Both the position numbers and the translations under genes were made by a program. Below, in pieces: positions 14,880-15,280 of a stretch of DNA of 40,904 bases; positions within the stretch are counted from its first letter, which is position 1, and each line of letters starts with the position of its first letter. The DNA is from Octopus bimaculoides (Eukaryota): the NCBI RefSeq assembly GCF_001194135.2, contig NC_069006.1, positions 17,447,520-17,488,423 of the forward strand, given 5' to 3'. The notes beneath the pieces were generated by a model. That model did no database searches. It saw nothing but the letters and a program-made list of their open reading frames with translations, and was not told where the DNA came from.

Positions 14880-15280
14880 TGATACTGCATATCCGAATAC
14901 AAGGGGCATTTTCCTTGTTTCTGCCTGTCTTTCTTGTTTACTCTTGTGGGTTTGAGGTCGTTGTGAATTCTTGGCAGAGAAGAAGATTCCGCGGTACACG
15001 TGTTTCAAGCTCTACATGTGTATAATATAATATAATATAATATAACATAATATAATATGTGTATAATCTACAATGTAAAGCTATCCTCAGCCGCAAAATT
15101 ATCTCTCTCCCAGGAAATTATACCATCTCGACGTTGAAGTAAGAAGAAATGTGTGATGTAAGAGGTGAAGATCCTTTCGGTATTCTGTATAGTACTTTAT
15201 CTGGTATAATTCTCCACCCGGACATAATCTCTCCGGTCCTTCGAAAACCTTCCATACCTTGCAACGATTCAGTGTGTATA
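14880..15280 (-). mobile_element. Probable Penelope-like element terminal remnant carrying the hammerhead
   Basis: CpG-retaining fragment around the hammerhead. Hammerheads with a palindromic helix III are a known Penelope-like element feature. Broken frames upstream (LCPGGELYQIKY; LQRRDGIISWERDNF) only faintly recall a GIY-YIG C-terminus. Boundaries are uncertain. Confidence 0.5.
14986..15099 (-). ncRNA. Type I hammerhead ribozyme (Penelope-like minimal/dimer type)
   Basis: Minus strand, read by hand: helix I 5' arm AUUUUGCGG (15099-15091); core CUGAGGA (15090-15084); U; helix II arm AGCUUUACAU (15082-15073); 55-nt loop; arm AUGUAGAGCU (15017-15008; 10 bp with one U-G); U; GAAA (15006-15003); C-ACGU-G; UA (GUA triplet); helix I 3' arm CCGCGGAAU (14994-14986; 9 bp with two U-G). 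All invariant core bases are present. The 10.1/11.1 position is a non-canonical U/U. Confidence 0.85.

What the first reader, a model, noticed from the sequence alone, without database searches (positions are those of the whole stretch)
14986..15099. Intact hammerhead ribozyme whose helix II loop holds a microsatellite
Seen: on the minus strand every invariant hammerhead base is in place (C3 U4 G5 A6 G7 G8 A9; G12 A13 A14 A15.1; U16.1 A17). Helix I has 9 bp and helix II has 10 bp. Helix III is only 2 bp, closed by the palindrome ACACGUGU. Predicted cleavage is after GUA, between 14995 and 14994. The two halves of the core are about 75 nt apart because loop II is a 55-nt (UUAUA)n-type tract, so a compact-motif search would probably miss it. 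Established: minimal type I hammerheads with palindromic helix III loops occur in Penelope-like retroelements and cleave best as dimers. Inference: this belongs to a Penelope-like or retrozyme-type family with an unusually long, microsatellite-bearing helix II. If it lies in a transcribed minus-strand intron, it could cut the host pre-mRNA. Caveats: position 10.1/11.1 is U/U, no second copy is present in the window, and I cannot tell whether the family is already described.
Basis: partly seen in the sequence, partly recalled or inferred. Interest (0 to 1): 0.85.

Follow-up and report, generated by a model that had tools for sequence, protein, structure and literature searches.

The report
Lone hammerhead ribozyme motif, octopus-like genome
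A single, structurally complete copy of the well-known self-cutting "hammerhead" RNA motif sits in junk-like repeat DNA of an octopus-type genome, with a simple repeat grown inside one of its loops; it is most likely a stranded relic of a mobile element, an ordinary kind of thing in animal genomes.

Summary
On the minus strand, 15099-14986 forms a type I hammerhead. The full core is in place. Helix I has 9 bp and helix II has 10 bp after a U/U at 10.1/11.1. Helix III has 2 bp inside the palindrome ACACGUGU. Loop II is 55 nt and holds a (UUAUA)n tract. My descriptor finds this site only. The chance expectation is about 1.4e-6 per window.

Rfam does not recognise it, even at E<=10. Thermodynamics predict stable helices I and II but an unstable monomer helix III, and a favoured double-hammerhead dimer.

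The window is repeat-rich, gap-containing DNA whose interspersed repeats match Octopus bimaculoides. I found no reverse transcriptase or GIY-YIG ORF, no tandem array and no second copy. No relative turned up in any collection I could search, so membership of a Penelope-like or retrozyme family is plausible but not shown.

The U/U mismatch has an active natural precedent in axolotl HHR_Amex2. A 14-nt direct repeat flanks the microsatellite, which points to secondary growth from an AU-rich apical loop of a 73-nt ancestor.

Verdict: a genuine solo hammerhead motif, a new member of a known kind, of modest interest.

The parts
15100..15116 (-). 5' strand of an imperfect extension of helix I (CCU.GGG.AGAGAGA..)
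   Evidence: MFE and centroid folds of the 201-nt and 465-nt contexts pair it with 14968-14985. The 201-nt hairpin has z=-3.2.
15091..15099 (-). Helix I, 5' strand AUUUUGCGG
   Evidence: 9 bp with 14986-14994, including 2 G.U. Pair probabilities are 0.59-1.0.
15084..15090 (-). Core C3 U4 G5 A6 G7 G8 A9 (CUGAGGA)
   Evidence: Sequence; descriptor hit.
15083..15083 (-). U at 10.1, facing U11.1 at 15007 (U.U instead of the usual G-C)
   Evidence: Sequence. The same mismatch occurs in the active axolotl HHR_Amex2 (PMC7229834).
15073..15082 (-). Helix II, 5' strand AGCUUUACAU
   Evidence: 10 bp with 15008-15017. Pair probabilities are 0.92-1.0.
15018..15072 (-). Loop II, 55 nt. It contains the (UUAUA)n microsatellite (TRF 15021-15058), bracketed by a 14-nt direct repeat (15016-15029 / 15057-15070).
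   Evidence: Collapsing the duplication gives a 73-nt hammerhead with a 14-bp helix II and a pentaloop.
15008..15017 (-). Helix II, 3' strand AUGUAGAGCU
15004..15007 (-). U11.1 followed by core G12 A13 A14
   Evidence: Sequence; G12=15006.
14996..15003 (-). Helix III region: A15.1 C15.2 - ACGU - G16.2 U16.1, the 8-nt palindrome ACACGUGU
   Evidence: The 2-bp stem has only 0.02 pair probability in the monomer. In the dimer the palindrome forms an intermolecular 8-bp helix. The dimer MFE is -62.9 kcal/mol against 2 x -25.0 for two monomers.
14995..14995 (-). A17. The predicted scissile bond is 3' of it, between 14995 and 14994.
   Evidence: Follows from U16.1=14996 and the standard hammerhead numbering.
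14986..14994 (-). Helix I, 3' strand CCGCGGAAU
14968..14985 (-). 3' strand of the helix I extension
15272..15504 (-). Flanking SINE-like repeat (family A) with a (TA)n tail, upstream of the hammerhead on the minus strand. It is not part of the ribozyme.
   Evidence: At least 10 other copies lie in the window, none with a hammerhead. It is 79-87% identical to copies in O. bimaculoides locus L008.
14619..14806 (-). Flanking SINE-like repeat (family B) with a (GAU)n tail, downstream of the hammerhead on the minus strand. It is not part of the ribozyme.
   Evidence: Other copies lie at 32679-32854, 30371-30540 and 18866-19044.

Best explanation
This is a genuine solo (monomeric) copy of a metazoan type I hammerhead ribozyme motif on the minus strand. 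It lies in non-coding, repeat-rich DNA of an octopus-type genome. It is most likely a stranded relic of a hammerhead-bearing retroelement, either a Penelope-like pLTR or a non-LTR retrozyme monomer.

Mechanism, which is established for the class and inferred for this copy: when the minus strand is transcribed, helices I and II form readily. Helix III (2 bp plus an ACGU loop) is too weak in a monomer. The catalytic fold would therefore need two copies to pair through the palindrome ACACGUGU, forming a double hammerhead. The 2'-OH of A17 then attacks the adjacent phosphate, cutting between 14995 and 14994 and leaving a 2',3'-cyclic phosphate and a 5'-OH.

The locus holds only one copy and has no loop-loop tertiary contacts. 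I therefore expect weak or no cleavage in vivo, with possible cleavage in vitro as a dimer at high Mg2+.

The microsatellite is a secondary expansion of an AU-rich apical loop of helix II. It lies outside the core and does not disturb the predicted helices. It looks like neutral decay in a microsatellite-rich genome rather than a functional feature.
For: - All core positions and all three helices are in the right topology, and the site is unique in the window.
- It is an extreme outlier among the 47 core-only candidates. The chance expectation is 1.4e-6 per window.
- Helix I and II pair probabilities are about 0.9-1.0, while helix III is 0.02 in the monomer. The dimer is favoured by about 13 kcal/mol, with an intermolecular 8-bp helix III.
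- The palindromic 15.2-16.2 / loop 3 region is a feature that Cervera & de la Pena list as emerging independently of their descriptors (PMC4209133).
- The combination of a 2-bp helix III, a tetraloop and a U.U at the base of helix II is found in axolotl HHR_Amex2. That family has about 60,000 copies, cleaves 22% in 1 h as a monomer, and cleaves much better as a dimer (PMC7229834).
- Most PLE-type motifs occur as solo copies. Monomer derivatives of retrozymes are dispersed genome-wide (bioRxiv 10.64898/2026.07.22.740005).
- A 14-nt direct repeat brackets the SSR. The collapsed 73-nt version folds as a compact hammerhead.
- Genome context: 55 TRF arrays, no tRNA, no Pfam domain, and 97 repeat HSPs against O. 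bimaculoides.
Against: - No Rfam hammerhead model scores it, even at E<=10.
- The G10.1-C11.1 pair, described as highly conserved, is replaced by U.U.
- No second copy, tandem array, RT/EN ORF or homologue was found. There is therefore no covariation evidence and no direct link to any retroelement.
- Helix I (9 to about 22 bp) and helix II (10-14 bp) are longer than in any described PLE or retrozyme family, and no loop 1-loop 2 contact is evident.
- The 465-nt stretch between the flanking SINEs is not unusually structured (z=-0.85).
- Activity is untested.
Confidence: 0.7

Rival explanations
1. Chance look-alike. A long imperfect hairpin or foldback, of which AT-rich and repeat-rich genomes hold many, happens to carry CUGANGA and GAAA...UH in its internal loop. 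It has never been a ribozyme.
For: - The analytic expectation is about 0.1 such motif per 2.7-Gb genome. That is not negligible if many genomes were screened.
- No relatives or covariation were found.
- Rfam is silent.
- 10.1/11.1 is non-canonical.
- The motif sits inside a longer hairpin.
Against: - Requiring the palindromic tetraloop lowers the expectation to about 0.006 per genome.
- C15.2-G16.2, the helix III palindrome and the U.U variant all match features of real animal hammerhead families, and none of them was part of the descriptor.
- Real hammerheads number thousands to more than 100,000 per animal genome, so the prior strongly favours a real one.
Confidence: 0.12
2. Active member of a currently mobile octopus retrozyme or PLE family. 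The locus is transcribed, its transcript dimerises with transcripts of other copies, self-cleaves and circularises. The long loop II is tolerated or even characteristic of the family.
For: - The core is intact, helices I and II are perfect, and the dimer is favourable.
- The long helix I extension would hold the ends together for ligation, as in retrozyme circRNAs (PMC7229834).
Against: - It is a single copy flanked by unrelated SINE insertions, with no tandem partner.
- No RT/EN lies within 40 kb.
- No related sequence was found in 25 kb of O. bimaculoides or in any collection scanned.
- The SSR bracketed by a duplication looks like post-insertion decay.
- The unit is not rod-like (z=-0.85).
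Confidence: 0.1
3. Host-domesticated cis-regulatory ribozyme, for example intronic like the amniote HH9/HH10. It would cut a minus-strand pre-mRNA, with loop II repeat length modulating folding.
For: Intronic hammerheads are a known class, which I state from my own knowledge of the Rfam families HH9 and HH10.
Against: - No exon or protein domain is recognisable anywhere in the window.
- No Rfam HH9 or HH10 match was found.
- Helix III is too weak for monomeric cis-cleavage.
- In Xenopus, retrozyme copies are depleted from introns and exons.
Confidence: 0.04

Closest known systems
Axolotl retrozyme hammerhead HHR_Amex2 (Cervera & de la Pena 2020, PMC7229834)
   Same: Both are type I. Both have a 2-bp helix III capped by a tetraloop and a U.U mismatch at the base of helix II. 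HHR_Amex2 cleaves weakly as a monomer and much better as a dimer, which is what is predicted for this copy.
   Different: HHR_Amex2 sits in about 350-bp tandem repeats with about 60,000 copies, has short helices and retains some loop 1-loop 2 contact. The copy here is solo, has 9-bp and 10-bp helices and a 55-nt loop II, and comes from a mollusc-type genome. No sequence homology has been shown.
Minimal hammerheads of Penelope-like elements (Cervera & de la Pena 2014, PMC4209133)
   Same: Both are type I with a larger-than-canonical helix II and a palindromic 15.2-16.2 / loop 3 region. Both are expected to act as dimers. PLE motifs are mostly found as solo copies scattered through invertebrate genomes.
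   Different: PLE min-HHRs have a short helix I (4-5 bp), a helix II of 6-8 bp, a bulged nucleotide between 9 and 10.1, and a conserved G10.1-C11.1. They lie in pLTRs next to an RT/GIY-YIG ORF. Here helix I is at least 9 bp, helix II is 10-14 bp, 10.1/11.1 is U.U, and no PLE ORF lies within 40 kb.
Invertebrate non-LTR retrozymes (coral, mussel; PMC7229834)
   Same: Both occur in low-GC DNA. Both are type I hammerheads with a 2-bp helix III and a tetraloop. The mussel families also lack the archetypal loop 1-loop 2 nucleotides.
   Different: Retrozymes are tandem repeats of about 170-400 bp that are expressed as circRNAs. No tandem array is present here, and expression is unknown.
Rfam Hammerhead_1 (RF00163) and related hammerhead models
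   Same: The catalytic core and the three-helix junction are the same.
   Different: No hammerhead model (RF00163 and relatives) scores this sequence at E<=10. The likely causes are the 55-nt insertion in loop II and the long helices. I could not test the collapsed form.

Membership tests
Hammerhead ribozyme (type I) | Invariant core: C3 U4 G5 A6 N7 G8 A9, G12 A13 A14, A15.1-U16.1, H17 | tested here: met
   CUGAGGA, GAA, A15.1...U16.1 and A17 are all present.
Hammerhead ribozyme (type I) | Three helices around the core. Helix I is open, and helices II and III are closed by loops. | tested here: met
   Helix I is 9 bp, helix II 10 bp and helix III 2 bp. Helices I and II appear in the MFE and centroid folds.
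Hammerhead ribozyme (type I) | G10.1-C11.1 pair closing helix II | tested here: not met
   The pair is U.U. A natural, active precedent exists in HHR_Amex2.
Hammerhead ribozyme (type I) | Match to curated covariance models (Rfam hammerhead families) | tested here: not met
   No hammerhead hit was found at gathering score, or at E<=10 on 701 nt or 136 nt.
Hammerhead ribozyme (type I) | Covariation in helices I and II among homologues | tested here: inconclusive
   No homologue could be retrieved. No eukaryotic genome collection was available.
Hammerhead ribozyme (type I) | Site-specific self-cleavage 3' of H17 | not testable with these tools
   Needs in vitro transcription or RNA end mapping.
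PLE-associated minimal hammerhead | Located in a pLTR flanking an RT + GIY-YIG ORF (solo truncated copies are also common) | tested here: not met
   No RVT or GIY-YIG Pfam hit was found in 112 ORFs of at least 55 aa across 40.9 kb.
PLE-associated minimal hammerhead | Short helix I (4-5 bp) and large helix II (6-8 bp) | tested here: not met
   Helix I is 9 bp, extendable to about 22 bp. Helix II is 10 bp, or 14 bp in the collapsed form. Helix II fits the trend but helix I does not.
PLE-associated minimal hammerhead | [quoted passage not shown] | tested here: inconclusive
   The U at 15083 could be read this way, but the register then leaves the U at 15007 unpaired as well.
PLE-associated minimal hammerhead | Palindromic 15.2-16.2 and loop 3, allowing a dimeric helix III | tested here: met
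   ACACGUGU is present, and an intermolecular 8-bp helix forms in the cofold.
Metazoan non-LTR retrozyme | Tandem repeats of about 170-400 bp, each with a type I hammerhead | tested here: not met
   TRF finds no such array, and self-BLAST finds no second copy. It could still be a monomer derivative.
Metazoan non-LTR retrozyme | Expression as linear and circular RNAs | not testable with these tools
   No transcriptome data were available.

The most novel reading that the evidence does not exclude
The copy represents an undescribed cephalopod-lineage hammerhead family with unusually long helices I and II. In that family the length of a polymorphic microsatellite in loop II would tune folding or dimerisation, and so self-cleavage. 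Such a family could be a mobile retrozyme or a host-co-opted element in a transcribed region.
Probability: 0.05. Interest if true: 0.6.

Novelty: new member of a known kind. Interest (0 to 1): 0.3.

Why it matters
It matters only modestly. It adds a cephalopod-type example to the very large catalogue of animal type I hammerheads. I found no paper in the searchable library that describes hammerheads in cephalopods.

It also shows concretely that curated covariance models miss copies whose loops have been inflated by microsatellites. Censuses of ribozyme relics in SSR-rich genomes are therefore likely to be undercounts.

If a genome-wide search revealed a family with these long helices, it would broaden the known structural range of retroelement hammerheads.

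Tried and rejected
- Rfam at gathering score and at E<=10 on three nested ranges gave no hammerhead family.
- Self-BLAST and 3-mismatch searches for either half of the motif in the window found only the site itself.
- A chimeric protein query of all ORFs in the unique 14799-15276 stretch found no homologue among 5.8e9 proteins.
- Exact-protein look-ups of two window ORFs found nothing on record.
- The viral-contig scan with a core-plus-palindrome pattern returned 7 identical phage contigs. This is a coding-region coincidence with no helices.
- The metagenome-contig scan with the exact 3' half gave 0 hits. The degenerate pattern gave 36 loci, none with helices.
- The genome-contig scan returned two gammaproteobacterial MAGs, which are chance hits.
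- A Pfam scan for RT/GIY-YIG in the window found nothing.
- The third homologue search, with P0001 to harvest more octopus loci, was wasted because I set too strict an E-value cut-off.
- I considered a SINE-borne hammerhead of the Schistosoma Sm-alpha type and rejected it. The flanking SINE families have many copies without the motif. ARAGORN and Rfam find nothing tRNA-like in the unique stretch.
- I tested the idea that the whole 465-nt inter-SINE stretch is a rod-like retrozyme unit. It is not supported (z=-0.85).
- The Lunse/Weinberg/Breaker 2017 paper on PLE hammerhead dimers could not be read because it is not held.

Full report

Yes. The minus strand from 15099 to 14986 reads AUUUUGCGG CUGAGGA U AGCUUUACAU [55 nt] AUGUAGAGCU U GAA ACACGUGU A CCGCGGAAU.

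I wrote an independent descriptor and ran it on both strands. It requires CUGANGA, helix II, GAAA, a helix III of at least 2 bp closed by A15.1-U16.1, UH and helix I. It returns one hit only: C3=15090, G12=15006, U16.1=14996. Helix I has 9 bp (two G.U). Helix II has 10 bp after a U/U at 10.1/11.1. Helix III has 2 bp.

Loop II is 55 nt. It contains a period-5 array at 15021-15058 with 7.6 copies and 93% matches.

**2. Is it more than chance?**

- 300 first-order Markov windows gave 0.043 hits at >=4/4 bp and none at >=6/6.
- The real window holds 47 candidates that satisfy only the core and a 2-bp helix III. The other 46 have helix I <=3 and helix II <=3, so the finding is a clear outlier at 9/10.
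- With the window's pairing probability of 0.388, the expectation for >=9/>=10 bp is 1.4e-6 per window.
- That is about 0.1 per 2.7-Gb genome, or 0.006 if the palindromic tetraloop is also required.
- The 36 metagenome loci and the phage contigs that matched a core-plus-palindrome pattern by chance all lack helices. They serve as an empirical null.

**3. Structure predictions**

- In the 114-nt motif, helix I pairs have probabilities of 0.59-1.0 and helix II pairs 0.92-1.0. Helix III has only 0.02.
- Two copies cofold to -62.9 kcal/mol, against 2 x -25.0 for monomers. The dimer has an intermolecular 8-bp ACACGUGU helix and exchanged helix I strands. This is the classical double hammerhead.
- Helix I continues imperfectly to about 22 bp, pairing 15116-15100 with 14985-14968. 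The 201-nt hairpin has z=-3.2.
- The whole 465-nt stretch between the flanking repeats is not unusually structured (z=-0.85).

**4. The microsatellite**

A 14-nt direct repeat (15016-15029 / 15057-15070, 93% identical) brackets the repeat tract. Collapsing it gives a compact 73-nt hammerhead whose helix II is 14 bp with one bulge and a pentaloop.

The simplest reading (inference) is that an AU-rich apical loop seeded a duplication and a slippage expansion after the copy was laid down. The genome is full of microsatellites, with 55 TRF rows in 41 kb. The tract lies outside the catalytic core and does not change the predicted helices.

**5. Context**

- The window is eukaryotic-looking. GC is about 35%. 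It has no tRNA genes, nine N runs and no long ORFs.
- None of 112 non-low-complexity ORFs of at least 55 aa has a Pfam domain, so there is no RT and no GIY-YIG endonuclease.
- ORFs read through its interspersed repeats hit one protein, 'uncharacterized protein LOC106868758 [Octopus bimaculoides]'.
- At the DNA level the window's repeats give 97 HSPs of 70-94% identity against that 24.8-kb O. bimaculoides locus. The window is from an octopus or a close relative.
- The hammerhead lies in a 465-nt unique stretch between two SINE-like copies of different families: 15272-15504 and 14619-14806, both in minus orientation. Those families have many other copies in the window, none carrying a hammerhead. 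The motif therefore does not belong to either SINE.

**6. Search for relatives**

Nothing was found.

- There is no second copy or half-copy in the window.
- No protein-level homologue of any ORF in the unique stretch was found.
- The window's ORFs are not on record in the assembly index.
- There was no true match in viral, metagenome or prokaryotic genome collections.
- None was found in the O. bimaculoides locus.
- No eukaryotic genome collection was available, so copy number, tandem organisation and covariation remain untested. This is the main gap.

**7. Comparison with what is known**

Cervera & de la Pena 2014 (PMC4209133) describe metazoan hammerheads as type I, with a helix III of 1-2 bp capped by a small palindromic loop. 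Their PLE min-HHRs have these features:
- a large helix II (6-8 bp) and a short helix I (4-5 bp);
- a conserved G10.1-C11.1;
- palindromic 15.2-16.2;
- mostly solo copies, with low activity even as dimers.

The copy here shares the palindrome, the large helix II and the solo state. It fails on helix I length and on G10.1-C11.1.

Cervera & de la Pena 2020 (PMC7229834) describe axolotl HHR_Amex2, which has about 60,000 copies. It has a 2-bp helix III with a tetraloop and a U.U mismatch at the base of helix II. It cleaves 22% in 1 h as a monomer and much better as a dimer.

A 2026 preprint (10.64898/2026.07.22.740005) links non-LTR retrozymes to PLE pLTRs. It reports dispersed monomer derivatives and depletion from introns and exons.

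Craig et al. 2021 (PMC8557442) note PLE remnants in cephalopods. I found no paper describing cephalopod hammerheads, or a microsatellite in loop 2.

Rfam's hammerhead models do not score the sequence. That is a failed membership test by curated model.

**8. Verdict**

This is a real, structurally complete solo type I hammerhead motif. It is most probably a relic of a hammerhead-bearing retroelement, with a secondary microsatellite expansion in loop II.

It would need dimerisation to cleave and is probably weakly active or inactive in its present single-copy state. Family assignment to a PLE or a retrozyme is plausible by resemblance but unproven. The intron-cutting idea cannot be assessed.

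It is a new member of a known kind, with interest about 0.3.

Noticed in passing
window 15272-15504; also 5800-5962, 1990-2152, 12231-12367, 12590-12778, 34806-34963, 37588-37738 and others: An abundant SINE-like repeat of about 150-210 bp (family A) with a (TA)n tail has at least 10 copies in 41 kb. The copies are 75-86% identical to each other and 79-87% identical to copies in the O. bimaculoides locus L008. It contains a 13-bp hairpin (15321-15350) that gives a weak, sub-threshold mir-84 match (E=0.8).
   Followed up: partly
window 14619-14806; 32679-32854; 30371-30540; 18857-19044: A second SINE-like family (B) ends in a (GAT)n tail. It is also present in the O. bimaculoides locus (for example L008 6688-6869, 78%).
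   Followed up: partly
window 24478-24759, 34378-34635, 20747-21084, 10699-11012, 38466-38625: A third interspersed repeat family (C, about 250-350 bp) usually contains an internal (AC)n tract. Read-through ORFs from this and the other two families were combined in one query, which matched an annotated O. bimaculoides 'protein' (LOC106868758) over 23% of its length. I did not check which family gave the match. That gene model may therefore include repeat-derived sequence.
   Followed up: partly
window 541-1300, 6704-6872, 8783-8824, 9101-9151, 11153-11194, 22686-22799, 35506-35856, 37422-37587, 38626-38661: Nine runs of N (assembly gaps) are present. The longest 'ORFs' listed mechanically (443-1426, 327 aa; 35265-35903, 212 aa; 6462-7007, 181 aa) each run across one of these N runs and are probably artefacts; I did not inspect them further.
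   Followed up: partly
L001-L007 (IMG/VR contigs, e.g. L001 3740-3796): Seven IMG/VR contigs from different samples share an identical stretch of at least 137 nt that matches the core-plus-palindrome pattern by coincidence. They are apparently the same phage recovered repeatedly, and the match has no hammerhead helices.
   Followed up: yes
window 1-2000: The first 2 kb have very low GC (0.22 by the profile, which includes the N run), with (TA)n and TATATG-type arrays at 1-108 and 325-400 flanking the first gap.
   Followed up: no
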